This document shows positions 1,442 to 33,176 of a stretch of 64,000 nucleotides of DNA, piece by piece (position 1 is the first letter of the stretch; each line of letters begins with the position of its first letter). The position numbers and the translations under genes are program-made. The notes beneath the pieces are model-generated. The model worked only from the letters and a program-made list of their open reading frames with translations, did not search any database and was not told the origin of the DNA. The stretch lies in the IMG/VR virus record IMGVR_UViG_3300031951_000003, positions 124,001-188,000 of that record. One strand, 5' to 3'.

Positions 1442-1834
1442 GGGGAAGTCATGGCAATTGATTGGCGTGTGTAGTTATAGGTGGCACGTAGGAGCTGAGT
1501 TAACTCCTTTATCAACTGATTTGAAAAAACAAATGGCAATACTTTTGCTAAGATGGCTGCTATCGGTTTAATCGCTGAAGAAGCTACTGTTGTTGCTTAA
1601 TTTAAGTCACGACACTCGGGTCGGTTAGGACATTAACCTAGGAACAGAAGTCCAATATACGGGTCACAGGTCAGAGCTCGTTTAAAATAATTCTGAGACC
1701 AAGTTGTTTGTAGGTGGGTTTCTCACATATATCAAACCTAATATTTCGGAACATTGAGAAACAATGTTGTAATAAACGTGTAGTCACTTATAGTTGTCGC
1801 GAACAAGACACGGGTTCGACTCCCGTCTTCTCCA
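1442..1834 (+). ncRNA. ssrA: tmRNA; tag reading frame 1535-1600 (A)GNTFAKMAAIGLIAEEATVVA*
   Basis: Acceptor GGGGAAG/CTTCTCC-A with G3.U70; T-arm GACACGGGTTCGACTCCCGTC; internal Ala-rich tag ORF. Confidence 0.93.
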
Positions 1835-1843
1835 CAGCAGATT

Positions 1844-1871
1844 AACCCCGAGAAACTCTCGGGGTTTTTTA
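1844..1871 (+). terminator. Intrinsic terminator after tmRNA
   Basis: AACCCCGAGA-aac-TCTCGGGGTT + T run. Confidence 0.85.
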
Positions 1872-1954
1872 TTTGACTTGTTAAAGATTTATTAATATTA
1901 TTTAGACGACTTTGGAAATTAAGACCATACTTATTTTAGTCGGAGAGCAATTTT

Positions 1955-2014
1955 ATGAAATATTATTTACTGACGAACTTCAAAACTTGTAATATCGGAA
2001 TCCCGTTGGCTTAG
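1955..2014 (+). CDS. Putative leader peptide MKYYLLTNFKTCNIGIPLA upstream of TonB-dependent receptor
   Basis: GGAGAG upstream; stop codon lies in the loop of a terminator-like hairpin. Confidence 0.4.
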   Translation: MKYYLLTNFKTCNIGIPLA

Positions 2015-2032
2015 CGTCCTCGGGATTTTTTT
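1999..2032 (+). terminator. Terminator-like hairpin in 5' leader of TonB-dependent receptor
   Basis: AATCCCG...CGGGATT followed by T run, ~30 nt before the ATG. Confidence 0.55.
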
Positions 2033-2059
2033 ATTTATAAACCAATAAACAAAAAAGCA

Positions 2060-5000
2060 ATGAAAAAAGCAATCTTGATGTCACTTTTAACCTTATTCGT
2101 GACAATCACATCTTTCGGGCAGATTACAACTTCTTCCCTGTCAGGTGTAGTTAAAAATGAAAAAGGTGAGACTTTGGTAGGTGCTACAGTTCATGCGGTA
2201 CACCAACCAACAGGTTCAGAATACCGTGCAACCACAAACAAAACGGGTGTCTACTCAATTCCGGCTGTACGTGTAGGAGGACCTTATCTTATTCACGTTA
2301 GTTACGTAGGCTACAGAAAAGCTGAACTAACTGACATCAACACTCTTCTTGGGGTTACAAGTAATGTTGACGTAACTCTTATTTCTGAATCAAAAGAGTT
2401 GAAAGAAGTTACTATTGTTGGAACGAGAAACAATTTATTCTCAAAAGACAAAACAGGGGCAGCTCAACAATTCGGACGTAGAGAACTAACTACAATTCCA
2501 ATTACGGGTGCAAGAACAATTGACGGAATTACCAAATACAATCCTTTTGGTGATGGTCGTTCTTTTGGAGCACAGGATTCTCGATTGAATAATTTTACAA
2601 TCGACGGTTCTCAGTTCAACAACAACTTCGGTTTGGGTTCATCAGCGGCTGCTGGTGGTAGAACAGGTGCTTCAGCAATTTCTTTGGATGCGATTGACCA
2701 ATTACAGGTGAACGTCGCTCCTTTTGACATTCGTCAAAGTGGTTTCGTGGGTGCAGGTATTAACGCTGTTACTCGTTCTGGAACTAACGAAATTGAAGGA
2801 AGTGTTTATCAAACACAAAGAAACAATTCAAAAACTTATGTGGGAGACAACGCTAGAGGAACTACAGTAACTGCTCAGAAATTTGATGAAAAAGTTTTCG
2901 GTTTTAGATTGGGTGCACCAATCATCAAAAATAAATTATTCATTTTTGGAAACTATGAAAGCATCGTTAGAACTGAACCAGGCACAACTTGGATTTCTAC
3001 CGGTTCTCCTTTGACAGGTTCACAAGTAAGTCGTGTTAAATACGATGACATGGTGAGACTTTCGAAGTTCATGAGAGATACTTTAGGTTATGAAACAGGT
3101 CCTTTTGAAGGTTATTCTAACACAAACGATTCAAGAAAATTCATGACTCGTTTGGATTGGAACATTAGTCCAAAACACAAGTTAATGGCACGTTTTGTTA
3201 ATCACAACTCATCCGCTGAGATTAACATTTCTAACTCTCAGTCAGCGGGTGCTGGAAACAGAACTACTCAATTCAACGCAATGAGTTTCCAAAACAGTGG
3301 ATACATTATTATGGATAATACTCGTTCAGGTGTATTAGAATTGAATTCTAAGTTTTCAAACACACTCCACAACAATTTGATTATCTCTTATGACAAACAA
3401 ATTGAAGACAGAGCTTACATGAGTCAAATGTTCCCAACAATTGACATCAGAGAAGGTTCAGCAACTTACACTTCTGTAGGTTTTGACCCATTCACACCAG
3501 GAAATAAATTGAACTATTGGACATTCAACGTTACTAACAACGTTACAAAATATTTGGAAAAACACACTTTGGTGGGTGGTTTCAACTATCAAATGTACCA
3601 ATCAAACAATTTATTCTTCCCAGCTTCGAACGGTGTATATATTTTCAACAGTTTGAATGACTTCTACACTGCAGCTAAACAATCAGTTGCTAATAATGGA
3701 GGACCTTCAGCTTTCGCACCAGCGAGATTTCAGTTTCGTTATTCTGCTTTACCTGGAGCGGTTGAACCAATGCAGGTATTGGAAGCTAATCGTTTAGACC
3801 TTTATGTTCAAGACGAGTATAACCTTACTAAGAATTTAAAATTAACAACGGGATTGAGAGCGAACGTAATTTCACTTGGAAATACAGCTCTTGAAAATCC
3901 TGCAATCACATCAATGACATTTGGTGGTGGTGAAAAATTAAACACGAGCGTGATGCCGAAAACACAATTGTTATTCGAACCACGTTTCGGTTTCAACTAT
4001 GATTTAAAAGGTGAAAAGAAAACTCAAATTAGAGGTGGTACAGGTATTTTCACAGGTAGACCTCCATTTGTTTTCTTATCAAACCAAATCGGAAATAACG
4101 GTGTATTAACAGGATTTATCGATGTATCAGGTGCTCAAGCATCACAATACGGATTTACTACAAATCCTAATCAATATTTTATTCCTCAAACACCAACATT
4201 ACCTTCAACTTTTGATTTAGCTTTCACTGACGCAAATTACAAGTTCCCTCAAGTATGGAGAAGTAATTTAGCAATCGACCAAAAACTACCTTGGTTGGGT
4301 TTAGTGGCAAGTGCTGAAGTTCTTTACAATAAGACAATAAACGCAGTTCATTACTACAACGCAAACCAAGATGTTCCTGTAGGAACTTTAGGTGGTCCTG
4401 ACAAAAGAGCATTGTTTGCAAATACTGACCCTGGTGTTAGAGTAAATGATAATGTTTCTATGGCAGCAGTTTTAACAAACAAACAAGGTGCTTACAACAA
4501 GTCTCTTACATTGAAATTAGAAAAACCAATTTCGAAAGGAGTTTGGGGTTATGCAGCTTGGACTACATCAAGAGCTGAAGATTACATGAGTGCTGGTTCA
4601 ATCGCGAGTGGTTCATGGCAATCAGCTCGTTCTATCAACGGAAACAACGATTTACAACTTTCTACTTCAGACTTTGTTGTTAGGAATAGAATCGTAGGTT
4701 TATTAGGTTATAGATTTGATTATGGTAAGAAATACGGTGGAGCAACTACAATCACTATTGGTTACGTAGGTGCTCAAAATAACCCATTCTCTTACACTGT
4801 AGCGGGTGACCTTAACGGTGATAGAGTTAGAGACAACGAACTTATGTTTGTACCTGTAAATGGTTCTGACATTCGTTTCTCAACTTTAACAGTAGGTACA
4901 AGAACTTATACAGAAGCTGAACAACAAGCGGCTTTCGAATCATTTATTTCTCAAGATGACTACCTTTCTACAAGAAGAGGTCAGTACGCTGAAAGAAACG

Positions 5001-5335
5001 CTTCTTTCCTTCCTTGGTTACACAGATTTGACCTTTCAGTGGCTCAAGATGTGTTCATAAAAATCAAAGGAAAAAGAAACACTTTCCAAATCAGAGCTGA
5101 CATCCTTAACTTCGGAAACATGGTTAATAACAAGTGGGGTGTTTCTCAAAGAGCGGCAGTTCCTCAGTTGTTAAACTTTGTAAGTAGAGACGCGAACAAT
5201 GTTCCTTCTTACAGACTTTCAACTCAAATTCTTGATGGACAAACAGTATTGGCAAAACAAACTTACCAATTCAACTCATCAGTATTTGACGTATGGAGTG
5301 CACAGTTAGGTATTAGATATACTTTCGGTAAGTAA
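2060..5335 (+). CDS. TonB-dependent outer-membrane receptor (Oar-like; carboxypeptidase-regulatory N-domain, plug, beta-barrel)
   Basis: Signal peptide; LSGVV..E.LVGATV N-domain; NNFTIDG and GAGINAVTRSGTN plug motifs; C-terminal QLGIRYTF. Confidence 0.92.
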   Translation: MKKAILMSLLTLFVTITSFGQITTSSLSGVVKNEKGETLVGATVHAVHQPTGSEYRATTNKTGVYSIPAVRVGGPYLIHVSYVGYRKAELTDINTLLGVTSNVDVTLISESKELKEVTIVGTRNNLFSKDKTGAAQQFGRRELTTIPITGARTIDGITKYNPFGDGRSFGAQDSRLNNFTIDGSQFNNNFGLGSSAAAGGRTGASAISLDAIDQLQVNVAPFDIRQSGFVGAGINAVTRSGTNEIEGSVYQTQRNNSKTYVGDNARGTTVTAQKFDEKVFGFRLGAPIIKNKLFIFGNYESIVRTEPGTTWISTGSPLTGSQVSRVKYDDMVRLSKFMRDTLGYETGPFEGYSNTNDSRKFMTRLDWNISPKHKLMARFVNHNSSAEINISNSQSAGAGNRTTQFNAMSFQNSGYIIMDNTRSGVLELNSKFSNTLHNNLIISYDKQIEDRAYMSQMFPTIDIREGSATYTSVGFDPFTPGNKLNYWTFNVTNNVTKYLEKHTLVGGFNYQMYQSNNLFFPASNGVYIFNSLNDFYTAAKQSVANNGGPSAFAPARFQFRYSALPGAVEPMQVLEANRLDLYVQDEYNLTKNLKLTTGLRANVISLGNTALENPAITSMTFGGGEKLNTSVMPKTQLLFEPRFGFNYDLKGEKKTQIRGGTGIFTGRPPFVFLSNQIGNNGVLTGFIDVSGAQASQYGFTTNPNQYFIPQTPTLPSTFDLAFTDANYKFPQVWRSNLAIDQKLPWLGLVASAEVLYNKTINAVHYYNANQDVPVGTLGGPDKRALFANTDPGVRVNDNVSMAAVLTNKQGAYNKSLTLKLEKPISKGVWGYAAWTTSRAEDYMSAGSIASGSWQSARSINGNNDLQLSTSDFVVRNRIVGLLGYRFDYGKKYGGATTITIGYVGAQNNPFSYTVAGDLNGDRVRDNELMFVPVNGSDIRFSTLTVGTRTYTEAEQQAAFESFISQDDYLSTRRGQYAERNASFLPWLHRFDLSVAQDVFIKIKGKRNTFQIRADILNFGNMVNNKWGVSQRAAVPQLLNFVSRDANNVPSYRLSTQILDGQTVLAKQTYQFNSSVFDVWSAQLGIRYTFGK

Positions 5336-10888: not shown

Positions 10889-10989
10889 TTTCTTTTTGTT
10901 TTTTTTGTTAATGTTTTAATAACGTCTTGAGTTTATAAATATAGAAAAGTTTTTCAGAATCGTCAATTAGCAGTGTAAACTTTTTTTTG

Positions 10990-11074
10990 CGGAGAGTATT
11001 GGATTCGAACCAATAGGCCAATTGCTCGACCACAGTTTAGCAAACTGCTCCTTTAACCACTCAGGCAACTCTCC
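10990..11074 (-). tRNA. tRNA-Ser(GCT)
   Basis: Cloverleaf with long variable arm; anticodon loop TTGCTAA. Confidence 0.93.
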
Positions 11075-11078
11075 TTTG

Positions 11079-11152
11079 TGTGAACGATGGGGTTCGAACC
11101 CACGACAACTAGCGCCACAAGCTAGTGCTCTTCCAACTGAGCTACGTTCACC
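11079..11152 (-). tRNA. tRNA-His(GTG)
   Basis: Cloverleaf; loop TTGTGGC; encoded G-1. Confidence 0.92.
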
Positions 11153-11164
11153 ATATTACTTACG

Positions 11165-11237
11165 AGGTCTTACTAGGATTCGAACCCAAATTTCTTCGTC
11201 CGTAGCGAAGTGTATTCATCCATTATACGATAAGACC
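11165..11237 (-). tRNA. tRNA-Arg(ACG)
   Basis: Cloverleaf; loop CTACGGA. Confidence 0.9.
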
Positions 11238-11320
11238 TATCTGTTATTTTCTTCTAAACATTTCGGACAAAGTCCGTCTTTGTCTAAAAGTGTTCCGTGA
11301 ATTCCACAAATATTATTCAT
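11237..11320 (-). CDS. 27-aa zinc-finger microprotein within the tRNA array
   Basis: MNNICGIHGTLLDKDGLCPKCLEENNR; CxxH...CxxC. Confidence 0.55.
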   Translation of the reverse strand: MNNICGIHGTLLDKDGLCPKCLEENNR

Positions 11321-11332
11321 AATAAAAATTTG

Positions 11333-11403
11333 TTATCCCCCAAGGATTCGAACCTTGAATAATTGGACCAAAACCAATTGTGTTACCGTTACACCAGAGG
11401 ATA
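11333..11403 (-). tRNA. tRNA-Gln(TTG)
   Basis: Cloverleaf; loop TTTTGGT. Confidence 0.9.
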
Positions 11404-11408
11404 TAATG

Positions 11409-11482
11409 TGGACCCTCACGGACTTGAACCGTGGACCTACTGATTATGAGTCAGCCGCTCTAACCAACTGAGCTAAGGGTCC
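11409..11482 (-). tRNA. tRNA with CAT anticodon, most likely Ile2 (lysidine type)
   Basis: GGACCCTTAGCTCAG...GACTCATAATC resembles Ile2 rather than initiator Met. Confidence 0.85.
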
Positions 11483-11549
11483 TTAAATGATTGTTACACT
11501 TGGTTGTGTTACTTCCTCCTGACACCACTCAGGACTTCAATCATTTTTG

Positions 11550-11631
11550 TGGGAGTAGCTGGACTCGAACCAACGAACTCGAAAGAGGGAAGATTTACAG
11601 TCTTCTGCCATTGCCACTAGGCGATACTCCC
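11550..11631 (-). tRNA. tRNA-Tyr(GTA)
   Basis: Cloverleaf with variable arm; loop CTGTAAA. Confidence 0.93.
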
Positions 11632-11635
11632 ATTA

Positions 11636-11768
11636 AGGAAAGGAGAAGATGGTTGCGTGGACATCTCCTTTTACGATTGGCATTACTCAGGTGTATTTCT
11701 CCCAACTCCGATGATACAGACCGAAATACACTCTCGAGTCATTAGTATCACCATTCCCCAATCAACCT
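11636..11768 (-). ncRNA. Candidate pseudoknotted ncRNA between tRNA-Trp and tRNA-Tyr
   Basis: Nested GATTGG/CCAATC, ACTC/GAGT, GTGTATTTC/GAAATACAC; second hairpin AAAGGAG-ATG/CAT-CTCCTTT; crossing pairs GGTGATAC/GTATCATC and GGTTG/CAACC. Confidence 0.6.
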
Positions 11769-11773
11769 ATTTG

Positions 11774-11846
11774 CACGCACGGTAGGACTCGAACCTACAA
11801 CACCTAGTTTTGGAGACTAGTACTCTACCAATTGAGCTACGCACGC
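11774..11846 (-). tRNA. tRNA-Trp(CCA)
   Basis: Cloverleaf; loop CTCCAAA. Confidence 0.92.
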
Positions 11847-11851
11847 GTGAC

Positions 11852-12400
11852 TTATTTTTTCGTCCATTTACTTTTAGAGAGTAAGTCATCCCAATCTTCA
11901 TATCCTTGTTCACGAGCATACTCATCGTTTTTTTTCCGAGTATATTCTTTCACTTTATCGGGGTCTCTCATTTCATCGGAATCTTTGAAACCTAATGATT
12001 TCGCACATTCCTCTTCACACCAGTTGTGAGAACCTATCTCTATGTTTATTGGTAAGTCAGTTTCCAAGGATTCGATAAAATCTTCGAATTGACTTGCCGA
12101 TTCATAAGGCATTGTGTAGATTCCTTCATGAACCTGATATCCACTTTCATTTTTACTGTCGAAAACCTCGATTCTACCCATTCTGTATTTTTCACCCATG
12201 AGTGAAAATACACCATATCCCACAGTTGAATAACTGAATCTACCACGAGTGCTTACACCTAACATATCAACACATCTTGGATTTGCCTCCATGTAATGCG
12301 CTAAGTGGTCAACAAGCATCTCATCACTTAGTTCTTTTCCTTCTTGTTTTCTTCGGATGTTATTCAGGAACCATAACAAATCCGCTCTATTGATTTTCAT
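11852..12400 (-). CDS. Hypothetical protein
   Basis: 182-aa ORF; TATCTTTG upstream (12416-12423). Confidence 0.7.
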   Translation of the reverse strand: MKINRADLLWFLNNIRRKQEGKELSDEMLVDHLAHYMEANPRCVDMLGVSTRGRFSYSTVGYGVFSLMGEKYRMGRIEVFDSKNESGYQVHEGIYTMPYESASQFEDFIESLETDLPINIEIGSHNWCEEECAKSLGFKDSDEMRDPDKVKEYTRKKNDEYAREQGYEDWDDLLSKSKWTKK

Positions 12401-12428
12401 AATTTTTTATTTATACAAAGATAACGAA

Positions 12429-12953
12429 TTATCTCTCAAGTTTTTTTATACATTCATCTATTTTATCTCTTAATCTACCACCATACCCGAAGTCACCATC
12501 TACCTGAACGTGTCTCCACATCGGAACTCTTGGTTTCATCCATTTATATTGACCATCAAGTTTCATGTCGTCGATTGAAATCCAATTTGAGATTTTATTA
12601 TCTTTTACCCACTTTGTGATTTCTGCTGCTCTTTCCCACTCAATTGAAGGTCTACTAAGTTTATTCCAAAGGTCCTGATGGGTTGTGATATCTACAATCG
12701 GAGCTGTTACACCATAGTATTGGAAAATACGTTTTAATTGTATAAAACTGAAATGTTTTCTCCAATCCGAACTCACAACTAAACTTGCGTTTGTTTCATC
12801 ACAAATTTTTTGAAGTGCTTGACAATCATCTTCAACCCATGGGTAAGGGATTGTAAAAGTTTTACTGTGTTCGTTCAGCGTAACTCTCCCATCACCCCAA
12901 GTTCCCCATGCCAGTGGTCCATCTACATCAATAAAAATAATTTTACGTCTCAT
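12429..12953 (-). CDS. HAD-domain protein of the Swiss-army-knife RNA-repair type (HAD_SAK_2-like)
   Basis: IIFIDVDGPL, VVSSDWR, WISIDD motifs. Confidence 0.75.
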   Translation of the reverse strand: MRRKIIFIDVDGPLAWGTWGDGRVTLNEHSKTFTIPYPWVEDDCQALQKICDETNASLVVSSDWRKHFSFIQLKRIFQYYGVTAPIVDITTHQDLWNKLSRPSIEWERAAEITKWVKDNKISNWISIDDMKLDGQYKWMKPRVPMWRHVQVDGDFGYGGRLRDKIDECIKKLER

Positions 12954-12967
12954 AACAATTTTATTTG

Positions 12968-13041
12968 TTGGAATGGGCGGATTCGAACCGCCGACATCTA
13001 ACGTATCAGATTAGCACTCTAACCAACTGAGTTACATTCCA
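12968..13041 (-). tRNA. tRNA-Ile(GAT)
   Basis: Cloverleaf; loop CTGATAC. Confidence 0.92.
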
Positions 13042-13047
13042 TTATTG

Positions 13048-13119
13048 AGGTCAGGATAGGAATCGAACCTACGTAGAAAGTTTTGCAGACTTCCGCCTAA
13101 GCCACTCGGCCACCCGACC
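13048..13119 (-). tRNA. tRNA-Cys(GCA)
   Basis: Cloverleaf; loop CTGCAAA; U73. Confidence 0.93.
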
Positions 13120-13126
13120 TTAATTG

Positions 13127-13198
13127 TGACCCCTGATGGATTCGAACCATCGACTTCTTCATTAAAAGTGAAGAGCTCTTCCACTGAGCTAAGAGGTC
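13127..13198 (-). tRNA. tRNA-Lys(TTT)
   Basis: Cloverleaf; loop CTTTTAA. Confidence 0.92.
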
Positions 13199-13202
13199 TT
13201 TG

Positions 13203-13275
13203 TGGTAACGGTCAGAATCGAACTGACCACACCTTGGTCTTCAGCCAAGTGCTCTACCAACTGAGCTACGTCACC
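13203..13275 (-). tRNA. tRNA-Phe(GAA)
   Basis: Cloverleaf; loop CTGAAGA. Confidence 0.92.
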
Positions 13276-13280
13276 ATTTG

Positions 13281-13353
13281 TAGTCCCTGTAGGAATCGAA
13301 CCTACGACACCTTGCATGTAAGGCAAGTGCTCTTCCAACTGAGCTAAGAGACT
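13281..13353 (-). tRNA. tRNA-Val(TAC)
   Basis: Cloverleaf; loop CTTACAT. Confidence 0.93.
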
Positions 13354-13360
13354 GAATTTG

Positions 13361-13432
13361 TAGCCCCGCACGGACTCGAACCGAAATCTCCACCGTGAAA
13401 GGGTGGCGTCCTAACCTTTAGACGACGGGGCC
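13361..13432 (-). tRNA. tRNA-Glu(TTC)
   Basis: Cloverleaf; loop CTTTCAC. Confidence 0.92.
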
Positions 13433-13457
13433 AAGAATTACAAACTTACAACCATTA

Positions 13458-13468
13458 TTTCAAAGAAC
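13458..13468 (-). promoter_or_regulatory. boxA-like antitermination element GTTCTTTGAAA
   Basis: Same word upstream of tmRNA; resembles rrn boxA. Confidence 0.5.
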
Positions 13469-13483
13469 CAAAAACTCCTTAAA

Positions 13484-13522
13484 TAAAAAAACCCCGAACT
13501 TCATTTCTGTAGTCCGAGGTTT
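13484..13522 (-). terminator. Attenuator terminator upstream of Glu..Ser tRNA block
   Basis: AAACCTCGGACT/AGTTCGGGGTTT + T run; 5' arm GGACTACAG can pair instead with CTGTAGTCT in the leader ORF. Confidence 0.85.
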
Positions 13523-13555
13523 GTATATATAACTCTTCAGGAATTATAGGCTATC

Positions 13556-13636
13556 TCATGAGACTACAGCGCGTGTCTTAAACCAACAAATCTCTTGTTG
13601 TTTACTATAGACTTTATTACGCACTATTGTTCTCAT
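13556..13636 (-). CDS. Leader peptide 1, MRTIVRNKVYSKQQEICWFKTRAVVS
   Basis: Follows TATATTTG (13654-13661); 3' end carries the antiterminator strand; codons match the downstream tRNAs. Confidence 0.75.
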   Translation of the reverse strand: MRTIVRNKVYSKQQEICWFKTRAVVS

Positions 13637-13695
13637 TATTATTATAATTACTACAAATATAGTAAATCTCTTTTAAAAATCAAATTATTTTTCTG

Positions 13696-13776
13696 TACCC
13701 CAAGAGAGACTCGAACTCTCACGACCGAAGTCATTGGTTCCTAAGACCAACGCGGCTACCATTACGCCATCGGGGT
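13696..13776 (-). tRNA. tRNA-Leu(TAG)
   Basis: Cloverleaf with variable arm; loop CTTAGGA. Confidence 0.92.
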
Positions 13777-13779
13777 ATT

Positions 13780-13995
13780 TTAGTGAGTTCCGTTTGTTAG
13801 AGAAACTCCGTGTTCAAACCCTTTTATGAAATCATTTATTTCTTCTTGGGTCATACTATTATAAACTCTCCCAACAACAAATCCAATTTCATTACCTAAA
13901 TCAGAAATATCGCCGATATAATTAATTTCTTTTTTGTGGTTATCAAATTCATTTAGAATTTTTTCCAAGATTGTATATGTAAACGCTCTAGTCAT
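13780..13995 (-). CDS. Hypothetical protein
   Basis: Start moved to MTRAFTY to avoid overlap with tRNA-Arg. Confidence 0.55.
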   Translation of the reverse strand: MTRAFTYTILEKILNEFDNHKKEINYIGDISDLGNEIGFVVGRVYNSMTQEEINDFIKGFEHGVSLTNGTH

Positions 13996-14007
13996 TTTTT
14001 TAAGTTG

Positions 14008-14079
14008 TAGTCCCGCCAAGAATCGAACTTGGAATTACTGCTTAGAAGGCAGTAGTTATATCCATTTAACTACAGGACC
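14008..14079 (-). tRNA. tRNA-Arg(TCT)
   Basis: Cloverleaf; loop CTTCTAA. Confidence 0.92.
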
Positions 14080-14083
14080 AAAG

Positions 14084-14170
14084 TACCTCAGGTGGGACTT
14101 GAACCCACACGGACATTTTCTGTCCACAAGATTTTAAGTCTTGCGCGTATACCGATTTCGCCACCAAGGT
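14084..14170 (-). tRNA. tRNA-Leu(TAA)
   Basis: Cloverleaf with variable arm; loop CTTAAAA. Confidence 0.93.
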
Positions 14171-14212
14171 ATAAAACAAAAGTAAGGAATCAGTATTGAA
14201 AAAACAAATGAA

Positions 14213-14917
14213 TTAGAACTTTTCTTCCCAAACAGTATCTCTTTCTGTTTCTTCAATATTCATTGTGTGATTTAAGGTTATCTCTTTACGGTCCAAATCA
14301 ATTTCGAAATTACCTTGAGAACCTTCGTTGATTTCCCATCCACCAAAATTATTTTCAAGCATTCTGTATGCGTAGTCTGAAACCACCGCAGGAACAGAAT
14401 CACCATTTGTAAAATCGTCTTCCAAGTAACCAGAGTCACCACTTCCATTGTAGTCAAGTTGAAGGACTCTATCACTAATTTCCTCGTCGTTTTCTAACGT
14501 ATCAAAAAGCTCCATTAAATCCTCATTGTCGTCTTCTTCCAAAGAATGAGTAATAGATTCGGTATTCCCAACATCATAGTAGCTATAGTCATAGGAGATT
14601 GAAATTTCTCTAGTTTTACAATCAATCTCAATCATAACTCTTCCCCAATTGATATCGTCATATTCGGGTTGTTTAATTAGTTCATTTTCACAAACATAAT
14701 AAATGCTTTTCTGAAAAATTGGAATTAATCCTTCAGGAATTTCCGCAACGTAATTATTTGAAAAATGTGTTACATTTTTCCAATCGATATCGTCACAATC
14801 AAAATAAGAGGTATTCATTTCGAATTCGACAAATGCATCTTCCATTCCGATGGAACCTAAATAACGACAGATACGATTTAAATACTTTTTTTCGTCTTTA
14901 GTTAATAAATCTTTCAT
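14213..14917 (-). CDS. DUF6878-like protein
   Basis: YNGSGDSG...GWEINEGSQG C-terminal motif. Confidence 0.6.
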   Translation of the reverse strand: MKDLLTKDEKKYLNRICRYLGSIGMEDAFVEFEMNTSYFDCDDIDWKNVTHFSNNYVAEIPEGLIPIFQKSIYYVCENELIKQPEYDDINWGRVMIEIDCKTREISISYDYSYYDVGNTESITHSLEEDDNEDLMELFDTLENDEEISDRVLQLDYNGSGDSGYLEDDFTNGDSVPAVVSDYAYRMLENNFGGWEINEGSQGNFEIDLDRKEITLNHTMNIEETERDTVWEEKF

Positions 14918-14930
14918 GATAATATAAATA

Positions 14931-15284
14931 TCAATCTTCGAACTCTAATTTTATTGTTTTCAACATCCAAGATGGCCTTGTGTTCGATACCATGTTGTTT
15001 ATCCATTCTTTTGCGGAAGGGATATAATTATTACAATCTTCCTTTACGTGTTGTTCACCAACATATCGGGTGTAGACTGTCTTACCATCACTGTTTTTGA
15101 ATTCAGGACCAAACCTCTTTTCCATTTCGAAAATCCCTTCCGAATGATGTCTAAACATTCTGTGTAAAGAATCCCCGAACCAACCTTTGGTCTCATCCAT
15201 CCACTCATGTAAATGAATATAATCCTCAGGTTTTCCACCAAACTTTTTAGCGGAACTTTTTGCATGTAAATTAGGGTGTGACAT
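14931..15284 (-). CDS. DUF6915-like protein
   Basis: MSHPNLHAKSSAKKFGGKPEDY..H.WMDETK..HRMFRHHSEGIF..EQHVKED; start reassigned. Confidence 0.7.
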   Translation of the reverse strand: MSHPNLHAKSSAKKFGGKPEDYIHLHEWMDETKGWFGDSLHRMFRHHSEGIFEMEKRFGPEFKNSDGKTVYTRYVGEQHVKEDCNNYIPSAKEWINNMVSNTRPSWMLKTIKLEFED

Positions 15285-15870
15285 TTCTCCAAGATTCTTT
15301 TCGATAACCAAATAAATGAAATTGCTCCTCAAAAATTTTATAAACGTAGTTGGATACTTCTTCATCATAAAATTCCTTCCATGGTTTCCTTTTTTCATTC
15401 ATTTGTCCTTCAAATTCTGTTTTGAATTTGTTATTACTTATGAACTCATCAAAGGTTTTCTTGATATCGGAATTCTCCAAATCCAAAAATTTCAAAGACT
15501 TGAGGTCATTCTCCAAATTTTCCTGTTTTATGAATTTATCAAATGGTCTACCCAAAATTTCATAATTTTTATGATATTGTAATTGATAATCATTAATTAT
15601 TTTCGGGTTTTCGAGGGATTCGAAAACCCAAGTTTTGAAATGTTTTTGAAAATCATTCAAATGATGTGAATACAAATAAAACAGGGATACTAGTCTAGAG
15701 TAAGGGTTTCTAACGTTTGATACGAAGAAATAGTCTTTTTTGTTGGAATCAAATGTAAAATGATGGTCAAAAGTTTGAAAACCCATAACACGAAGAAGTT
15801 CTTTAGTTGAACGTGTTCCTGTTCTTTGTGGGGTAAACCAATAAACTTTGTGTTTCTCTGAGATATGCAT
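15271..15870 (-). CDS. Sulfotransferase family 2-like protein
   Basis: PQRTGTRS and VRNPYSRLVS motifs; paralog of 7533-8153. Confidence 0.75.
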   Translation of the reverse strand: MHISEKHKVYWFTPQRTGTRSTKELLRVMGFQTFDHHFTFDSNKKDYFFVSNVRNPYSRLVSLFYLYSHHLNDFQKHFKTWVFESLENPKIINDYQLQYHKNYEILGRPFDKFIKQENLENDLKSLKFLDLENSDIKKTFDEFISNNKFKTEFEGQMNEKRKPWKEFYDEEVSNYVYKIFEEQFHLFGYRKESWRNVTP

Positions 15871-16103
15871 TAGTAAATTTTTGTGTTGTTTCTTCTTGCC
15901 TCTTCCGCTTCCTTATAGATACGTATCCAAGTTAGAGTAATATCAACAGGTGCTAACACCCAACACATGATAATCAAACCTAAAGTATCTAATCCAGGTG
16001 AGATACCAAGACCACCTGCCATAACATCTCTGTTCCATTTTCTTACTGACATGACAAGACAATAAGCCAAACAGATTAAATAATAAGACCAAAAAATTTC
16101 CAT
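15870..16103 (-). CDS. Small membrane protein
   Basis: Two hydrophobic segments; abuts the next gene. Confidence 0.55.
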   Translation of the reverse strand: MEIFWSYYLICLAYCLVMSVRKWNRDVMAGGLGISPGLDTLGLIIMCWVLAPVDITLTWIRIYKEAEEARRNNTKIY

Positions 16104-16119
16104 AACTTTCAAATTTTAG

Positions 16120-16192
16120 TGGAGAATGAGGGAGTCGAACCCACGACAACTTGAATGCAAATCAAGTGCTCTACCAACTGAGCTAATTCCCC
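16120..16192 (-). tRNA. tRNA-Ala(TGC)
   Basis: G3.U70; loop TTTGCAT. Confidence 0.93.
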
Positions 16193-16198
16193 TATTTG

Positions 16199-16271
16199 AG
16201 CCTCCTGTCGGAATCGAACCAACGACCTACTGATTACAAATCAGTTGCTCTACCTGCTGAGCTAAGGAGGC
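16199..16271 (-). tRNA. tRNA-Thr(TGT)
   Basis: Cloverleaf; loop TTTGTAA. Confidence 0.93.
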
Positions 16272-16277
16272 GATGTG

Positions 16278-16350
16278 AGCGGAAGACCAGGCTCGAACTG
16301 GCCACCCCGACCTTGGCAAGGTCGTGCTCTACCGAATGAGCTACTTCCGC
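16278..16350 (-). tRNA. tRNA-Gly(GCC)
   Basis: Cloverleaf; loop TTGCCAA. Confidence 0.94.
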
Positions 16351-16359
16351 AATTTTCTG

Positions 16360-16432
16360 AGCGGGAGACCAGGCTCGAACTGGCCACCTATAGCTTGGAA
16401 GGCTATCGCTCTACCAAATGAGCTACTCCCGC
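16360..16432 (-). tRNA. tRNA-Gly(TCC)
   Basis: Cloverleaf; loop CTTCCAA. Confidence 0.94.
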
Positions 16433-16436
16433 ATAT

Positions 16437-16538
16437 TCCGTTTTTCCTTCACATTTAGCCCAATCACCAGTGAAACAATGATTGGATTTTGGATGGAGAA
16501 GTCTGCAAGGATTTCTCCCATTAGACCGTTACCACGGA
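16437..16538 (-). ncRNA. Candidate structured RNA between tRNA-Asp and tRNA-Gly
   Basis: Closing TCCGT/ACGGA; internal GGAGAA/TTCTCC and CCAATCA/TGATTGG. Confidence 0.4.
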
Positions 16539-16551
16539 CAAACTCTACCAG

Positions 16552-16625
16552 CGGAACGGACGGGGCTCGAACCCGCGACCTCTTGCGTGACAGGCAAGCA
16601 TTCTAGCCAACTGAACTACCGCTCC
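16552..16625 (-). tRNA. tRNA-Asp(GTC)
   Basis: Cloverleaf; loop CTGTCAC. Confidence 0.94.
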
Positions 16626-16630
16626 ATTTG

Positions 16631-16817
16631 AACAGGTTTTTTGTGTCCTTTTACACATCATGACCAACATATTACTACATTGGTGGTTACATTTTCGTCT
16701 TTGGTTAATTACTCCTGACTTATAGTAAACACTACCCTCACCGCTCTGATACCGCGAATCAAGACGGCGTCTTTGGGATTCATATACCGTGGGGTTCCAC
16801 CACAGTCTTCACCTGTT
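16631..16817 (-). ncRNA. Candidate ~190-nt multi-stem ncRNA between tRNA-Asn and tRNA-Asp
   Basis: Ends pair AACAGGT/ACCTGTT; stems CTGTGG/CCACGG, CGTCTT/AAGACG, CCAA/TTGG, TGTGT/ACACA. Confidence 0.5.
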
Positions 16818-16820
16818 TTG

Positions 16821-16892
16821 CGTCCTCTCATGGGCTCGAACCATGGACCCTCTCGTTAACAGCGAGATGCTCTACCGCTGAGCTAAGAAGAC
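16821..16892 (-). tRNA. tRNA-Asn(GTT)
   Basis: Cloverleaf; loop CTGTTAA. Confidence 0.93.
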
Positions 16893-16898
16893 GTTTTG

Positions 16899-16972
16899 TT
16901 GGGAAGACAGGATTCGAACCTGCGGCCCCCTGGTCCCAAACCAGGTGCTCTACCGGGCTGAGCCACTTCCCA
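16899..16972 (-). tRNA. tRNA-Pro(TGG)
   Basis: Cloverleaf; loop TTTGGGA. Confidence 0.93.
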
Positions 16973-23386: not shown

Positions 23387-24064
23387 ATGAATATCGGTAA
23401 CGAATTTACATCCTATTACACAAAACATTTAGGGAAAGGTTCACTTGACCTACACTACTTCAATCAACAAATTGAATCTTCAATGACTCCATATATTTTG
23501 GAAGAAAGGGAGATGAGAGCAACTCAGATTGACATATTCTCACGTTTGATGAGAGACAGAATAATTTGGGTGGCTGGTGGTGTTGATGATAGAATGTCGA
23601 CCGTAGTTCAAGCACAATTAATGTTCTTAGATAATAGTGATAAAACTGACATAACGATGCACATTGACTCACCAGGTGGCAGCGTGAAATCAGGACTCTC
23701 AATGGTTGATGTCATGCAATATGTCACTTGTGATATCCGAACTGTTAACACAGGTATGGCGGCTTCTATGGGTTCAGTTTTACTTGGTGCAGGAACCAAA
23801 GGCAAACGCTCCTCCCTCAAGTTCTCTAAAACGATGCTTCACCAGACATCAGGTGGTGCGGGCGGAAATATTCAAGATGCGAGAATCAATTTCATTGAGT
23901 GGGAAAAAACCAACAAAATATTGTTTGAATTATTAGGTGAGTTTTGTGGTAAAACTCCCGAACAAGTTATGGAAGACTCCTCTCGAGATTTTTGGTTATC
24001 TGCTGAAGAGTCCGTTGAATATGGTATTATTGACGAGATTGTTAAAACAAAAAAGAAGGGTTAA
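23387..24064 (+). CDS. clpP: ATP-dependent Clp protease proteolytic subunit
   Basis: DIFSRLMRDRII, SPGGSV, AASMG (Ser), MLHQ (His), RDFWLSAEE (Asp). Confidence 0.96.
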   Translation: MNIGNEFTSYYTKHLGKGSLDLHYFNQQIESSMTPYILEEREMRATQIDIFSRLMRDRIIWVAGGVDDRMSTVVQAQLMFLDNSDKTDITMHIDSPGGSVKSGLSMVDVMQYVTCDIRTVNTGMAASMGSVLLGAGTKGKRSSLKFSKTMLHQTSGGAGGNIQDARINFIEWEKTNKILFELLGEFCGKTPEQVMEDSSRDFWLSAEESVEYGIIDEIVKTKKKG

Positions 24065-24130: not shown

Positions 24131-24784
24131 TTAAGCCACCGCAGGTTTTGCCTGAACTTTATTTAAAACATTTTCAGCTTTGTCCGTGAAACTTCCAAAG
24201 AGCTTGCATACACCATCTGACATTTGTTTTTCGAGGCCCTTGATGAATTCAGTATCTTTGATTGCTCCACCCAATAAGTTTCTTATTATACCGTAACCTG
24301 TCCCGTCCATACCTTTCGATTGCATCATAGTTCTGACCAAAGCCTCTGCTAAACTCTCAGCAACCAATTTTGTTAATTCTCTACAGTCGGATAATGCATT
24401 TGCTAATCTTCTTGGGTCTGATGCAATGAATGATGATACAAATTTTGCGAAAGGACCTTTCATATTGAACCAACCAAAAATAGAATCAATCATAGGTTCT
24501 ACAATTGCCTGTCCTAATACGCTCCATCCTTGTCCAAATAGTTTATCTAATATATCTGTGAATTTGAATTCCTCATTAATTAGACCTTGTGATTCAAGAA
24601 CATTAATCTCTTTCAATACTTGAATGAAAACCTTTTTTTGTTTTTCCTCAGATAAAGACCTGAATTTTGATTTAGATTCAACAATAACTTTCAATCTACT
24701 TTCAACTAATGTTGTTTCAACAAGTCTATTATCTCTTTTCTTTTTTTCCTCGAGTAATTTTTTTCTTACAATTTTATTTACCAT
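24131..24784 (-). CDS. Hypothetical (putative virion-associated) protein
   Basis: Repeated LLEE/LVE/IVE/INE motifs in the N-terminus. Confidence 0.65.
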   Translation of the reverse strand: MVNKIVRKKLLEEKKKRDNRLVETTLVESRLKVIVESKSKFRSLSEEKQKKVFIQVLKEINVLESQGLINEEFKFTDILDKLFGQGWSVLGQAIVEPMIDSIFGWFNMKGPFAKFVSSFIASDPRRLANALSDCRELTKLVAESLAEALVRTMMQSKGMDGTGYGIIRNLLGGAIKDTEFIKGLEKQMSDGVCKLFGSFTDKAENVLNKVQAKPAVA

Positions 24785-24793
24785 AAAAATTTT

Positions 24794-25756: not shown

Positions 25757-25757
25757 A

Positions 25758-26609: not shown

Positions 26610-26647
26610 AAGATTTTTCTTTATAAATATTACGATATTCCCTATTT

Positions 26648-32145: not shown

Positions 32146-32146
32146 A

Positions 32147-32380
32147 ATGATAAATCCATTCTGTTTTATAGGTGCTCATAATTGGGAGTATAGAAAAGAA
32201 AAACATAAAGTTGAAGGTCATCCTCAAAATCGTGAATACATCCGCGTAGTTGTTAGAGAATGTGTTTGGTGTGGACACAGAGAACACCACCCTCTCCCAA
32301 GAGTTGAACGTAAATTCACTAACTGGAAACCCTTTGACGATATTCAGAAAGATGATACAATAAATTTTGAAAGATTATAA
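32147..32380 (+). CDS. Small Zn-binding phage protein
   Basis: FCFIGAHNW...RECVWCG. Confidence 0.6.
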   Translation: MINPFCFIGAHNWEYRKEKHKVEGHPQNREYIRVVVRECVWCGHREHHPLPRVERKFTNWKPFDDIQKDDTINFERL

Positions 32381-32393
32381 AAAACAAAAAAAA

Positions 32394-32606
32394 ATGCAAA
32401 CATTAGTTTTCAACACAACAACAAAAACTGTAAAATTACTCGATTCCAAAACAGCAACTGGTTCCCTCCTTTTAGAATATTCAAATATTCCAACAGTAAA
32501 AGTTTTGGAGGGTTATTATGAGGTTATCCAAAGTGACGAATTTGAAAAAAAATACCCCGTTCTCAGAGTTCCAATTGCGAATACTAATATGATTATAAGC
32601 AAATGA
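32394..32606 (+). CDS. Hypothetical protein
   Basis: MQTLVFNT... in operon. Confidence 0.6.
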   Translation: MQTLVFNTTTKTVKLLDSKTATGSLLLEYSNIPTVKVLEGYYEVIQSDEFEKKYPVLRVPIANTNMIISK

Positions 32607-32806
32607 TAAAAGACTCCCGATTTACAGAGATTTTTGAGAATACAATTCCTCATGGTTCCTTCTTAAGTGAAAGTGCGATAAAGAGCTGCATGTATCAATC
32701 ATATAAATTGGGAAATGAAGATGTTATAAAATGGTTATTAGAAAATAAACACCTTTCTGACAACATTCAATATATTGTTGACGAATGGAATAATCAAAAC
32801 CGATAG
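32603..32806 (+). CDS. Hypothetical protein
   Basis: ATGA overlap with upstream gene. Confidence 0.6.
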   Translation: MIKDSRFTEIFENTIPHGSFLSESAIKSCMYQSYKLGNEDVIKWLLENKHLSDNIQYIVDEWNNQNR

Positions 32807-32808
32807 AA

Positions 32809-32967
32809 ATGACTAGCGAAGACATTGTTCAAGAAATATTATTCGAAGCACACTCGTTCGGTCTTATGGATGAAGTTCGTGAGACCGCAAGACTAATCAT
32901 ATTGGAAGACCCCAAAATTGATAGGGTTGTCGCATATCAAATGGCATTTGAAGAATGGGTAAAATAA
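32809..32967 (+). CDS. Hypothetical 52-aa protein (not in ORF track)
   Basis: MTSEDIVQEILFEAHSFGLMDEVRETARLIILEDPKIDRVVAYQMAFEEWVK fills the operon gap. Confidence 0.6.
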   Translation: MTSEDIVQEILFEAHSFGLMDEVRETARLIILEDPKIDRVVAYQMAFEEWVK

Positions 32968-33176
32968 AAGAACTTGATTTACATGGTCTCACAAATCTTG
33001 AGGCTCGAGACAAAGTTGAAAATTTTGTTTTACTTTATTCTACTGAATTACCAATTAGAATTATTACAGGAGGTTCGGAAAGAATGAGAAACATGACCGT
33101 AAACATTCTCCAAAAACATAAATTTACTTATGACATACCCGCACATAACACAGGTGAAATAATCGTTTTATCATGA
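32955..33176 (+). CDS. Stand-alone Smr (small MutS-related) domain protein
   Basis: ELDLHG...EA...IRIITG...N.G. Confidence 0.8.
   Translation: MGKIKELDLHGLTNLEARDKVENFVLLYSTELPIRIITGGSERMRNMTVNILQKHKFTYDIPAHNTGEIIVLS

What the first reader, a model, noticed from the sequence alone, without database searches (positions are those of the whole stretch)
1442..33176. Dispersed phage-encoded ribosome-rescue chain: Smr domain, tmRNA and ClpP
Seen: a stand-alone Smr protein (32955-33176), tmRNA and catalytically intact ClpP (23387-24064) in one window. Known: SmrB-type nucleases cut mRNA at collided ribosomes, tmRNA rescues the resulting non-stop complexes, and ClpP degrades the tagged products. Inference: together with the attenuated tRNA array, the phage carries a coordinated kit for surviving host translation shut-off. 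SmpB and ClpX are not in this window.
Basis: inference. Interest (0 to 1): 0.62.

Follow-up and report, generated by a model that had tools for sequence, protein, structure and literature searches.

The report
Phage tmRNA, ClpP and mini-Smr genes
A 321-kb freshwater jumbo phage really carries a tmRNA, a cell-type ClpP protease and a tiny Smr nuclease, but they are three separate accessory genes, not a linked ribosome-rescue kit: close relatives keep the tmRNA and ClpP yet lack the Smr gene.

Summary
All three parts are real. The tmRNA (1442-1837) scores 76 bits against Rfam. ClpP (23387-24064) is a cellular, Bacteroidota-type enzyme with an intact Ser-His-Asp triad. The 73-aa protein (32955-33176) has a confident Smr fold and an intact DxH motif, although it falls just under Pfam's cut-off. 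The complete 321-kb genome has no SmpB, ClpX or ArfB.

The proposed chain is not supported. The genes lie 22 and 9.5 kb apart in separate gene runs, beside sugar or nucleotide-metabolism genes. The tmRNA is a lineage-wide feature, found in 8 of 9 complete genomes examined. Smr is a presence/absence polymorphism. It is cleanly missing at the syntenic site in complete relatives that keep tmRNA, ClpP and bS21. Conversely, it occurs in phages without a tmRNA. Smr also lacks the N-terminal hook or KOW domain that recruits cellular Smr proteins to collided ribosomes.

New points:
- The tmRNA tag is 21 aa (GNTFAKMAAIGLIAEEATVVA), not ARAGORN's 8 aa. It is conserved in frame across relatives and twice the length of the Bacteroidota tags sampled.
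- Contigs from four metatranscriptome libraries cover only the tmRNA gene.

This is ordinary-to-moderate interest: new members of known kinds.

The parts
1442..1837 (+). Full-length one-piece tmRNA gene. It has a tRNA-like domain with G3:U70, and CCA is not encoded.
   Evidence: ARAGORN. Rfam RF00023 gives 76.4 bits, E 6.7e-28, model 1-374. Acceptor-stem sequence read. Contigs from four metatranscriptome libraries cover only 1470-1814.
1535..1600 (+). Tag reading frame of the tmRNA: resume codon GGC, 21 codons, then UAA. It encodes GNTFAKMAAIGLIAEEATVVA.
   Evidence: The frame is open and has the same length in 6 tmRNA variants that are 69-93% identical. Variable columns by codon position are 10/6/16. 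ARAGORN's 8-aa tag is the 3' part of this frame.
10989..16972 (-). Three blocks of tRNA genes, 23 in total. This is the context between the tmRNA and ClpP. A 24th tRNA lies at 37395-37483(+).
   Evidence: ARAGORN. Rfam RF00005 gives 52-73 bits each.
23387..24064 (+). Cellular-type ClpP proteolytic subunit with triad S127/H152/D201. It carries a Bacteroidota-type N-terminal extension.
   Evidence: PF00574 gives 195.7 bits. NF011091 ClpP gives 235 bits against 67 bits for the ClpP-related head-maturation protease. PDB ClpPs match at E 3e-47. Cellular Bacteroidota ClpPs are 44-47% identical over the full length.
32955..33176 (+). Stand-alone 73-aa Smr-fold protein. DxH is D8-L9-H10. The GxG position reads G39-G40-S41. 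Its stop overlaps the thyA start.
   Evidence: PF01713 E 1e-4. A family of at least 144 stand-alone homologues of 67-81 aa. Model pLDDT 93. Foldseek top hits are Smr domains.
33173..34267 (+). Thymidylate synthase homologue. It is the immediate downstream neighbour of Smr in this lineage (context only).
   Evidence: PF00303 gives 290 bits. The adjacency is seen in 21 loci.

Best explanation
These are three independently held accessory genes of a complete 321-kb freshwater jumbo phage. Its host is probably a member of the Bacteroidota.

(1) The tmRNA is a core, expressed gene of this phage lineage. The phage has no SmpB, so the tmRNA must use the host's SmpB, AlaRS and EF-Tu (inferred). It would free ribosomes stalled on broken or stop-less mRNAs in the infected cell and add Ala plus a phage-specific 21-aa tag.

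(2) ClpP is a Bacteroidota-derived, catalytically intact protease subunit. Without a phage ClpX or ClpA, it can act only with a host unfoldase or mixed into host ClpP rings (inferred). It may or may not degrade tagged proteins.

(3) The 73-aa Smr protein is a patchy, horizontally mobile mini-nuclease with an intact DxH catalytic motif and no targeting domain. I take it to be a free-standing nicking nuclease that does not sense ribosome collisions. I judge DNA a somewhat more likely substrate than RNA. It is not an obligate partner of the tmRNA.

The apparent co-occurrence arises because Smr happens to sit in lineages where the tmRNA is universal.
For: Identities are established. The genome is complete and lacks SmpB, ClpX and RF-1. 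SmpB is absent from 45 of 45 Smr-bearing viral records, whereas five 540-642-kb megaphages all have it.

The tmRNA is core. It is over the Rfam cut-off in 5 of 6 complete Smr-selected genomes and 3 of 3 complete terminase-selected genomes. Contigs from four metatranscriptomes are confined to the tmRNA gene.

Smr is accessory.
- It is found in 0 of 16 terminase-selected relatives, including 3 complete genomes.
- tblastn confirms its absence over all of G450 and over the syntenic 35 kb of G456, with G011 as positive control at E 7e-48.
- The sites are empty, with both flanking genes conserved.
- Smr is 71% identical between lineages whose terminases are 27% identical and which share only 43 of 388 proteins.
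- It sits in three different contexts: thyA; QueC, GTP cyclohydrolase I and a phosphoribosyltransferase; and a gp23 structural module.
- Family members turn up in only 2 of 401 Bacteroidota genomes sampled, one strong hit and one weak broken one.

There is no hook or KOW domain; only 7 residues precede the DLHG motif. The genes are dispersed with unrelated neighbours. ClpP is of Bacteroidota type.
Against: Among Smr-selected viral records, tmRNA (22 of 45), bS21 (20 of 45) and ClpP-family genes (18 of 45) are far more frequent than I would expect for phages in general. All 6 complete records have a tmRNA or bS21. No true base rate was measured, so some functional affinity of Smr for translation-equipped phages is not excluded.

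Cellular SMR domains contact bS21 on stalled ribosomes, and SMR and S21 genes are linked in some bacteria.

In group B phages a ClpP-like gene lies only 3.5-4.6 kb from the tmRNA. This is compatible with a tmRNA-ClpP link.

No substrate of the Smr protein was tested. Dependence on host SmpB and ClpX is inference only.
Confidence: 0.62

Rival explanations
1. The phage Smr cuts mRNA at collided ribosomes, the phage tmRNA rescues the resulting non-stop complexes, and the phage ClpP destroys the tagged products. The three act as one coordinated kit against host translation shut-off.
For: All three genes exist and look functional. The DxH motif that SmrB needs is invariant. tmRNA is found in 22 of 45 Smr-bearing records and in 5 of 6 complete ones. 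The genome also has 24 tRNAs and bS21.
Against: Smr is absent from complete close relatives that keep tmRNA, ClpP and bS21. Smr is present without a tmRNA in G031 and in marine T4-like contigs. Among the megaphages, tmRNA and Smr are found in different genomes. The genes are not linked and do not share a gene run. There is no hook or KOW domain, and an SMR-only SmrB does not bind ribosomes. There is no SmpB or ClpX. The ClpP-like gene of group B is a different, truncated type, and G017 has none.
Confidence: 0.08
2. Smr is a mobile DNA-nicking endonuclease gene, selfish or homing-like, or a helper of DNA metabolism or modification. It inserts beside nucleotide-metabolism genes and has nothing to do with translation.
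For: It shows presence/absence polymorphism at syntenic sites in two lineages. It is 71% identical across phages with 27%-identical terminases. Its position relative to thyA varies: upstream in most loci, downstream in L049. Its neighbours are thyA, or QueC, GTP cyclohydrolase I and a phosphoribosyltransferase. Its closest structures are the DNA-nicking Smr domains of MutS2 and N4BP2. JGI names some members 'DNA-nicking Smr family endonuclease'.
Against: At 73 aa it has no DNA-binding or specificity domain. There is no intron or intein context. Queuosine-pathway genes can also serve tRNA modification. In B. subtilis the Smr domain of MutS2 itself works on ribosomes (PMC10897456, listed).
Confidence: 0.3
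3. The ClpP is the phage's head-maturation (prohead) protease, not a partner of host Clp ATPases.
For: PHROGs' best hits are 'head maturation protease' families, with phrog_94 at 121 bits. ClpP-like prohead proteases are common in phages.
Against: NCBIfam gives 235 bits to cellular ClpP against 67 bits, under the 120 cut-off, for the ClpP-related head-maturation protease. The match to bacterial ClpP runs the full length, including the N-terminal axial region. The neighbours are carbamoyltransferases and a heptosyltransferase-like protein, not capsid genes. The terminase lies 35 kb away.
Confidence: 0.05
4. Smr works on ribosomes together with the phage-encoded bS21. For example, it may distinguish or cut mRNA on ribosomes according to which bS21 they carry. 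The link to translation would then run through bS21 rather than through the tmRNA.
For: bS21 is found in 20 of 45 Smr-bearing records, including lineages without a tmRNA (G031, marine T4-like contigs). The genome itself has bS21. The SMR domain of SmrB touches bS21, and SMR and S21 genes are linked in some bacteria.
Against: G456 and G457 have bS21 but no Smr. G011, G017 and G019 have Smr but no bS21. The two genes are 48 kb apart here. No base rate or phylogenetic correction is available.
Confidence: 0.07

Closest known systems
tmRNA (ssrA, Rfam RF00023), including the tmRNA/SmpB pairs reported in huge phages (Al-Shayeb et al. 2020, PMC7162821)
   Same: A one-piece tmRNA that matches the full model. 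It has a tRNA-Ala-like acceptor with G3:U70 and an internal tag frame ending in UAA with a non-polar C-terminus.
   Different: There is no phage SmpB, unlike the five megaphages tested. The tag is 21 aa and ends in VVA, against 9-10 aa ending in A-L/M-A-A in the seven Bacteroidota sampled. The long tag is conserved across the lineage.
Bacterial ClpP (MEROPS S14; NCBIfam NF011091/PRK14514 type), and the patchy ClpP of jumbo phages (Iyer et al. 2021, PMC7824862)
   Same: Full-length ClpP fold with an intact Ser-His-Asp triad and an N-terminal region. It is 44-47% identical to cellular Bacteroidota ClpP.
   Different: It is phage-encoded with no ClpX, ClpA or adaptor in the genome. It scores under all NCBIfam equivalog cut-offs (235 against 361). 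It is 60-72% identical to copies on other large phage-like contigs.
E. coli SmrB, the collision-sensing mRNA endonuclease
   Same: Smr fold and an invariant DxH catalytic motif.
   Different: It lacks the N-terminal hook that wraps uS2. The second Gly of the GxG loop is an invariant Ser. SmrB was not among the 50 listed structural matches. An SMR-only SmrB fails to bind ribosomes.
Smr domains of MutS2 and human N4BP2; E. coli YdaL/SmrA
   Same: These are the best structural matches: TM 0.76-0.81 normalised to the model for the best of them, at 18-27% identity. Like YdaL, the phage protein is a stand-alone protein.
   Different: It has no ATPase, KOW or other partner domain. It is much shorter than YdaL. 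Unlike SmrA, it keeps DxH.

Membership tests
tmRNA (RF00023) | Covariance-model score at or above the gathering score over the full model | tested here: met
   76.4 bits against 47, model positions 1-374, E 6.7e-28.
tmRNA (RF00023) | tRNA-Ala-like acceptor stem with the G3:U70 identity pair | tested here: met
   5' GGGGAAG pairs with 3' CTTCTCC, which gives G3:T70. The discriminator is A (sequence read).
tmRNA (RF00023) | Internal open tag frame ending in a stop codon and conserved as a coding sequence | tested here: met
   A 21-codon frame at 1535-1600 is open and equal in length in 6 variants, with changes mostly at third positions.
trans-translation system (tmRNA plus SmpB) encoded by the phage | An SmpB gene in the same genome | tested here: not met
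   PF01668 gives no match at E<=1 in the complete genome. It is absent from 45 of 45 related records. Controls and the megaphages are positive.
ClpP (peptidase S14, PF00574) | Family HMM score over the cut-off, and the Ser-His-Asp triad | tested here: met
   195.7 bits against 20.2. S127, H152 and D201 align with the triad motifs of S. pneumoniae ClpP 1y7o.
ClpP equivalog (NCBIfam NF011091 / TIGR00493) | Score over the curated equivalog cut-off | tested here: not met
   235 against 361, and 188 against 309. It is a diverged ClpP, not an equivalog.
ClpXP/ClpAP protease encoded by the phage | A cognate AAA+ unfoldase gene in the genome | tested here: not met
   TIGR00382 (clpX) gives no match at E<=1.
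ClpP-related head-maturation protease (NF045542) | Score over the cut-off, and a position in the capsid gene module | tested here: not met
   67 bits against 120. The neighbours are carbamoyltransferases. The terminase is 35 kb away.
Smr domain (PF01713) | Pfam score at or above the gathering score | tested here: not met
   22.9 bits against 25.7, E 1e-4. 23 of 27 family members hit Smr at E<0.01 and no other family.
Smr domain (PF01713) | Smr fold | tested here: met
   Model pLDDT 93. The top Foldseek matches are Smr domains of MutS2, N4BP2 and YdaL, with TM 0.76-0.81 for the best of them and probability 1.00.
Smr domain (PF01713) | Catalytic DxH motif | tested here: met
   L7-D8-L9-H10-G11 is invariant in 27 sequences. 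The motif is defined.
Smr domain (PF01713) | GxG RNA-binding loop | tested here: inconclusive
   The family has G39-x-S41, with an invariant Ser in place of the second Gly. Changing the central residue of the GxG loop had no effect in SmrB.
SmrB-type collision sensor | N-terminal helix or hook that binds uS2, or a KOW domain as in the Bacteroidetes clade and MutS2 | tested here: not met
   Only 7 residues precede the DLHG motif, and the whole protein is the Smr domain. The requirement is described.
SmrB-type collision sensor | Binding to collided ribosomes and cleavage of mRNA | not testable with these tools
   This needs biochemistry.
Coordinated Smr-tmRNA-ClpP module | The genes co-occur across relatives | tested here: not met
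   Three complete terminase-selected relatives have the tmRNA but not Smr. G031 has Smr but no tmRNA. G017 has Smr and tmRNA but no ClpP.
Coordinated Smr-tmRNA-ClpP module | Physical or operon linkage | tested here: not met
   The genes are 22 kb and 9.5 kb apart, in separate gene runs with unrelated neighbours.

The most novel reading that the evidence does not exclude
The phage-restricted mini-Smr family is a ribosome-directed nuclease after all. It would need no hook because it reads a phage-supplied feature, such as phage bS21, or acts on any translating host ribosome. By creating non-stop complexes it would feed the SmpB-less phage tmRNA. That tmRNA's unusually long, conserved 21-25-aa tag would carry a phage-specific signal, for example for the phage ClpP or an unknown adaptor. 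Together these would form a facultative, modular phage takeover of translational quality control.
Probability: 0.08. Interest if true: 0.75.

Novelty: new member of a known kind. Interest (0 to 1): 0.3.

Why it matters
Phage tmRNAs, phage ClpP and Smr nucleases are each already known, so the parts are not new kinds. Three things are useful.

- A tempting three-gene 'ribosome-rescue chain' is shown not to be a conserved unit. This guards against over-reading gene inventories of jumbo phages.
- An abundant freshwater phage lineage carries a core, apparently expressed tmRNA without SmpB. Its conserved tag is twice the length of the Bacteroidota tags sampled. That makes it a tractable case for asking what a phage gains from re-tagging stalled host or phage proteins.
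- There is a phage-restricted family of minimal (67-81 aa) Smr nucleases with an intact active-site motif that moves between distant phages. Its substrate, DNA or RNA, is an open and easily testable question.

Tried and rejected
1. DNA searches of the phage collection with the ClpP-Smr region and with the tmRNA region found nothing. Relatives were reached only through proteins.
2. A profile of the Smr family against PDB sequences gave no Smr hit. The relation to Smr showed only by Pfam (weakly) and by fold.
3. PHROGs has no family for the Smr protein or its small neighbours.
4. ARAGORN's 8-aa tag and the register of the Rfam alignment (GCA AUA...) were both rejected in favour of the conserved 21-codon frame.
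5. I looked for synteny with the 540-642-kb megaphages. There is none: only ClpP and Smr match individually, so they are not close relatives.
6. Smr-selected co-occurrence looked striking at first (tmRNA in 22 of 45, bS21 in 20 of 45). It was then explained by lineage, using terminase-selected relatives.
7. Terminase-based sampling returned mostly short fragments of the same two lineages. A proper 2x2 table or independent-contrast test could therefore not be built.
8. The Smr profile found nothing in three Bacteroidota genomes and only 2 hits (one strong, one weak and broken) in 401 sampled. No cellular source clade could be named.
9. ClpP as a prohead protease was rejected.
10. No complex prediction was run, because I do not claim that any two of these proteins bind.

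Full report
WHAT THE WINDOW IS. The window is bases 124,001-188,000 of a single 321,139-bp virus record. The record has direct terminal repeats, a CheckV completeness of 100% and 35% G+C. Table 11 gives 94% coding density, so no other genetic code is needed. The terminase has hundreds of relatives at 85% identity or more on IMG/VR contigs. The DNA is found in lake and other freshwater metagenomes, and in runs labelled 'fungus metagenome', from many studies. ClpP is of the Bacteroidota type (NF011091). Its cellular relatives are Olivibacter, Psychroflexus and Flavobacteriaceae at 44-47% identity. Copies at 60-72% identity sit on long contigs binned mostly with Bacteroidota MAGs. A SusC/TonB-receptor-like protein lies next to the tmRNA. 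A Bacteroidota host is therefore likely, but this is an inference.

tmRNA. ARAGORN and Rfam agree on 1442-1837(+): 76.4 bits against a gathering score of 47, over the full model. The acceptor stem has G3:U70, and CCA is not encoded.

ClpP. The gene lies at 23387-24064 and PF00574 gives 196 bits. It aligns end to end with solved bacterial ClpPs at E 3e-47, with Ser127, His152 and Asp201 in place. It scores 235 bits against cellular ClpP and only 67 bits, under the cut-off, against the ClpP-related head-maturation protease. The PHROGs label 'head maturation protease' is therefore misleading here.

Smr. The gene lies at 32955-33176 and encodes 73 aa. The Pfam Smr score of 22.9 bits is just under the 25.7 cut-off. 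The protein nevertheless belongs to a well-conserved family of at least 144 stand-alone proteins of 67-81 aa, with invariant LDLHG. Of 27 members, 23 hit Smr and nothing else. The AlphaFold model (pLDDT 93) has Smr domains of MutS2, N4BP2 and YdaL as its best structural matches, with TM 0.76-0.81 for the best of them.

Whole genome. It has no SmpB, no ClpX and no RF-1/ArfB, and just one ClpP and one Smr.

A CORRECTION: THE TAG. ARAGORN reports AEEATVVA. Relatives' tmRNAs, which are 69-93% identical to this one, show a longer frame. It starts at GGC (window 1535) and ends at UAA (1598-1600). It is always 21 codons long and changes mainly at third positions, with variable columns of 10, 6 and 16 for codon positions 1, 2 and 3. 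The conserved pattern is G[N/E]TFAK[M/L]..GL..E..VV.A. Here it reads GNTFAKMAAIGLIAEEATVVA. A second phage lineage, group B with genomes of 169-183 kb, has tags of 23-25 aa (...MTFDDLMAFVGADYALAA) in most members. Seven cellular Bacteroidota tmRNAs have tags of 9-10 aa ending in A-L/M-A-A. The phage tag is thus about twice as long as these and ends differently (VVA or VVAA).

EXPRESSION. Contigs of four lake or freshwater metatranscriptome libraries from four studies lie only on 1470-1814. That is inside the tmRNA gene. None lie on the 440 bases upstream, and only one run has a little on the downstream gene. Several contigs match with no mismatches. This fits a discrete, abundant, stable RNA. 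Contigs cannot prove transcription or define the RNA ends.

ARE THE THREE GENES A UNIT? LINKAGE. They are not linked. The tmRNA follows a minus-strand gene and precedes the TonB-receptor-like gene. ClpP ends a plus-strand run made of an HNH endonuclease, two small ORFs, two NodU-type carbamoyltransferases and a heptosyltransferase-like protein. Smr sits in a run of small ORFs, and its stop overlaps the start of thymidylate synthase. The distances are 22 kb and 9.5 kb, and the tRNA blocks lie between the tmRNA and ClpP.

CO-OCCURRENCE: FIRST IMPRESSION. I took the 45 longest of the 80 IMG/VR loci that hold an Smr relative. Among them:
- tmRNA is over the Rfam cut-off in 22 records, and in 5 of the 6 that are at least 90% complete.
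- A ClpP-family gene is in 18 records.
- bS21 is in 20 records.
- SmpB is in none.

This looks like support, but the sample was chosen on Smr, and two of the six complete genomes are near-copies of this genome.

CO-OCCURRENCE: CONTROL. I chose relatives by terminase instead: lineage A, which is this genome's, and lineage B. All 3 complete genomes (G456 at 317 kb, G449 at 179 kb, G450 at 183 kb) have the tmRNA. None of the 16 records has Smr.

I checked this directly.
- In G456 the region is syntenic, with ClpP at 85% identity and ThyA at 57%. The 52-aa ORF and Smr are simply missing between the 67-aa ORF and thyA.
- In G450 the genes on either side (family 9 and GTP cyclohydrolase I) are conserved at 79% and 89% identity. 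Smr and the next small ORF are missing.
- The same search finds Smr in G011 at E 7e-48.
- G456 also keeps bS21.

Conversely, Smr occurs without a tmRNA in G031 (95% complete) and in marine T4-like contigs. Among five megaphages, Smr is in the two without a detectable tmRNA and is absent from the three with one.

The tmRNA is therefore a core gene of these lineages, present in 8 of 9 complete genomes. Smr is a patchy accessory gene.

CLPP ACROSS LINEAGES. ClpP is also uneven. The cellular type (186-196 bits) is confined to lineage A, in 12 records. Group B has a truncated 179-aa ClpP-like protein (81 bits) that lacks the N-terminal axial region. G017 has none. That ClpP-like gene lies 3.5-4.6 kb from the tmRNA in four group B genomes. 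This is the only hint of a tmRNA-Clp connection.

WHAT THE SMR PROTEIN IS.
- The catalytic DxH motif (D8-L9-H10) is invariant. The GxG loop reads G-x-S.
- Only 7 residues precede the DLHG motif, so there is no SmrB-type hook and no KOW domain.
- The family is essentially phage-restricted. The profile found it in 2 of 401 Bacteroidota genomes sampled, one strong hit and one weak broken one.
- It is 71% identical between this genome and G011, although their terminases are 27% identical and they share only 43 of 388 proteins.
- It sits in three different contexts: next to thyA; next to QueC, GTP cyclohydrolase I and a phosphoribosyltransferase; and inside a gp23 structural module.

High conservation, empty syntenic sites and shifting contexts together are the behaviour of a horizontally mobile accessory gene. 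I cannot tell whether it cuts DNA or RNA. The neighbours and the best structural matches lean towards DNA nicking. The bS21 and tmRNA company, and the ribosome role now known for MutS2, keep RNA open.

MOST LIKELY WORKING. In the list below, 'shown' marks what the data establish and 'inferred' marks my reading.
- tmRNA. Shown: it is complete, conserved and probably expressed, with a conserved 21-aa tag and no phage SmpB. Inferred: it is charged by host AlaRS and delivered by host SmpB and EF-Tu. It frees ribosomes stalled on broken mRNAs during infection, and its tag marks the products.
- ClpP. Shown: it is of cellular type with an intact triad, and there is no phage unfoldase. Inferred: it works with host ClpX or ClpA, or mixes with host ClpP. 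Iyer et al. read the patchy ClpP of jumbo phages as directed against the host (PMC7824862).
- Smr. Shown: it has the Smr fold, an intact DxH motif and no targeting domain, and it is accessory. Inferred: it is a free-standing nicking nuclease.

COMPARISON WITH WHAT IS KNOWN. Al-Shayeb et al. already reported tmRNAs and SmpB in huge phages (PMC7162821). I found no paper that uses the phrase 'phage-encoded tmRNA' or that links Smr to phages. The parts are new members of known kinds. The SmpB-less, long-tag tmRNA lineage is the most distinctive element.

LIMITS.
- No base rate of tmRNA or bS21 in comparable phages was measured.
- Most relatives are fragments, and only nine complete genomes were compared.
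- Absence in G449 rests on the profile search alone.
- The host is inferred.
- All functional statements about partners and substrates are inference.

Noticed in passing
window 2060-5335 (+): A 1091-aa TonB-dependent-receptor/SusC-like outer-membrane beta-barrel (CarboxypepD_reg plus OMP_b-brl_4, 181 bits) is encoded by the phage directly after the tmRNA. This is unusual cargo and a hint of a Bacteroidota host.
   Followed up: no
window 19465-23351 (+): Two tandem NodU/CmcH-type carbamoyltransferases and a TibC-heptosyltransferase-like protein lie just upstream of ClpP. They may be a glycan- or nucleotide-modifying set.
   Followed up: no
G000:C1:108720-108872 (outside the window, about 15 kb upstream of it): The phage encodes ribosomal protein bS21 (PF01165, 39.9 bits). 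bS21 is also found in 20 of 45 Smr-bearing viral records, but it is kept in G456, which lacks Smr.
   Followed up: partly
window 33173-34267 (+): The thymidylate synthase homologue is 364 aa against a 266-position Pfam model, so it carries about 90-100 extra residues. Its start overlaps the Smr stop.
   Followed up: no
G456:C1:154510-154829; G450:C1:61869-62291: These are empty sites of about 320 and 420 bp where relatives lack Smr plus one adjacent small ORF, while both flanking genes are conserved. It is a clean indel polymorphism in two lineages.
   Followed up: yes
G011:C1:52161-52700 and 56545-56929; likewise in G019, G020 and G450: In the 169-183-kb group B phages a truncated 179-aa ClpP-like gene lies 3.5-4.6 kb from the tmRNA.
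   Followed up: partly
LR745206.1 and LR756502.1 (loci L003, L004, L018, L020): Both megaphages encode SmpB (167-177 bits) but show no RF00023 match over the cut-off, even with the laxer filters. They may have a divergent or two-piece tmRNA.
   Followed up: partly
G000:C1:1-100 and 321040-321139: Both contig ends lie in a tandem coding repeat (GTTCCAGATGAACCTGA-like, Pro/Asp/Glu-rich). The 'direct terminal repeat' may therefore be an assembly break inside a repetitive gene rather than a true genome end.
   Followed up: no
window 37597-38220 (+), 9370-10665 (+), 18371-18859 (+): A 2OG-Fe(II) oxygenase, an M23 peptidase and an HNH endonuclease lie among the genes between and around the three features.
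   Followed up: no
G000 proteins at 24783-26645, 173618-174457, 185489-185794 and 199799-200050: Besides Smr, only four other proteins are 67-71% identical between this genome and G011, although the core genes are 25-45% identical. This may be a small set of genes exchanged horizontally between the two phage lineages.
   Followed up: no
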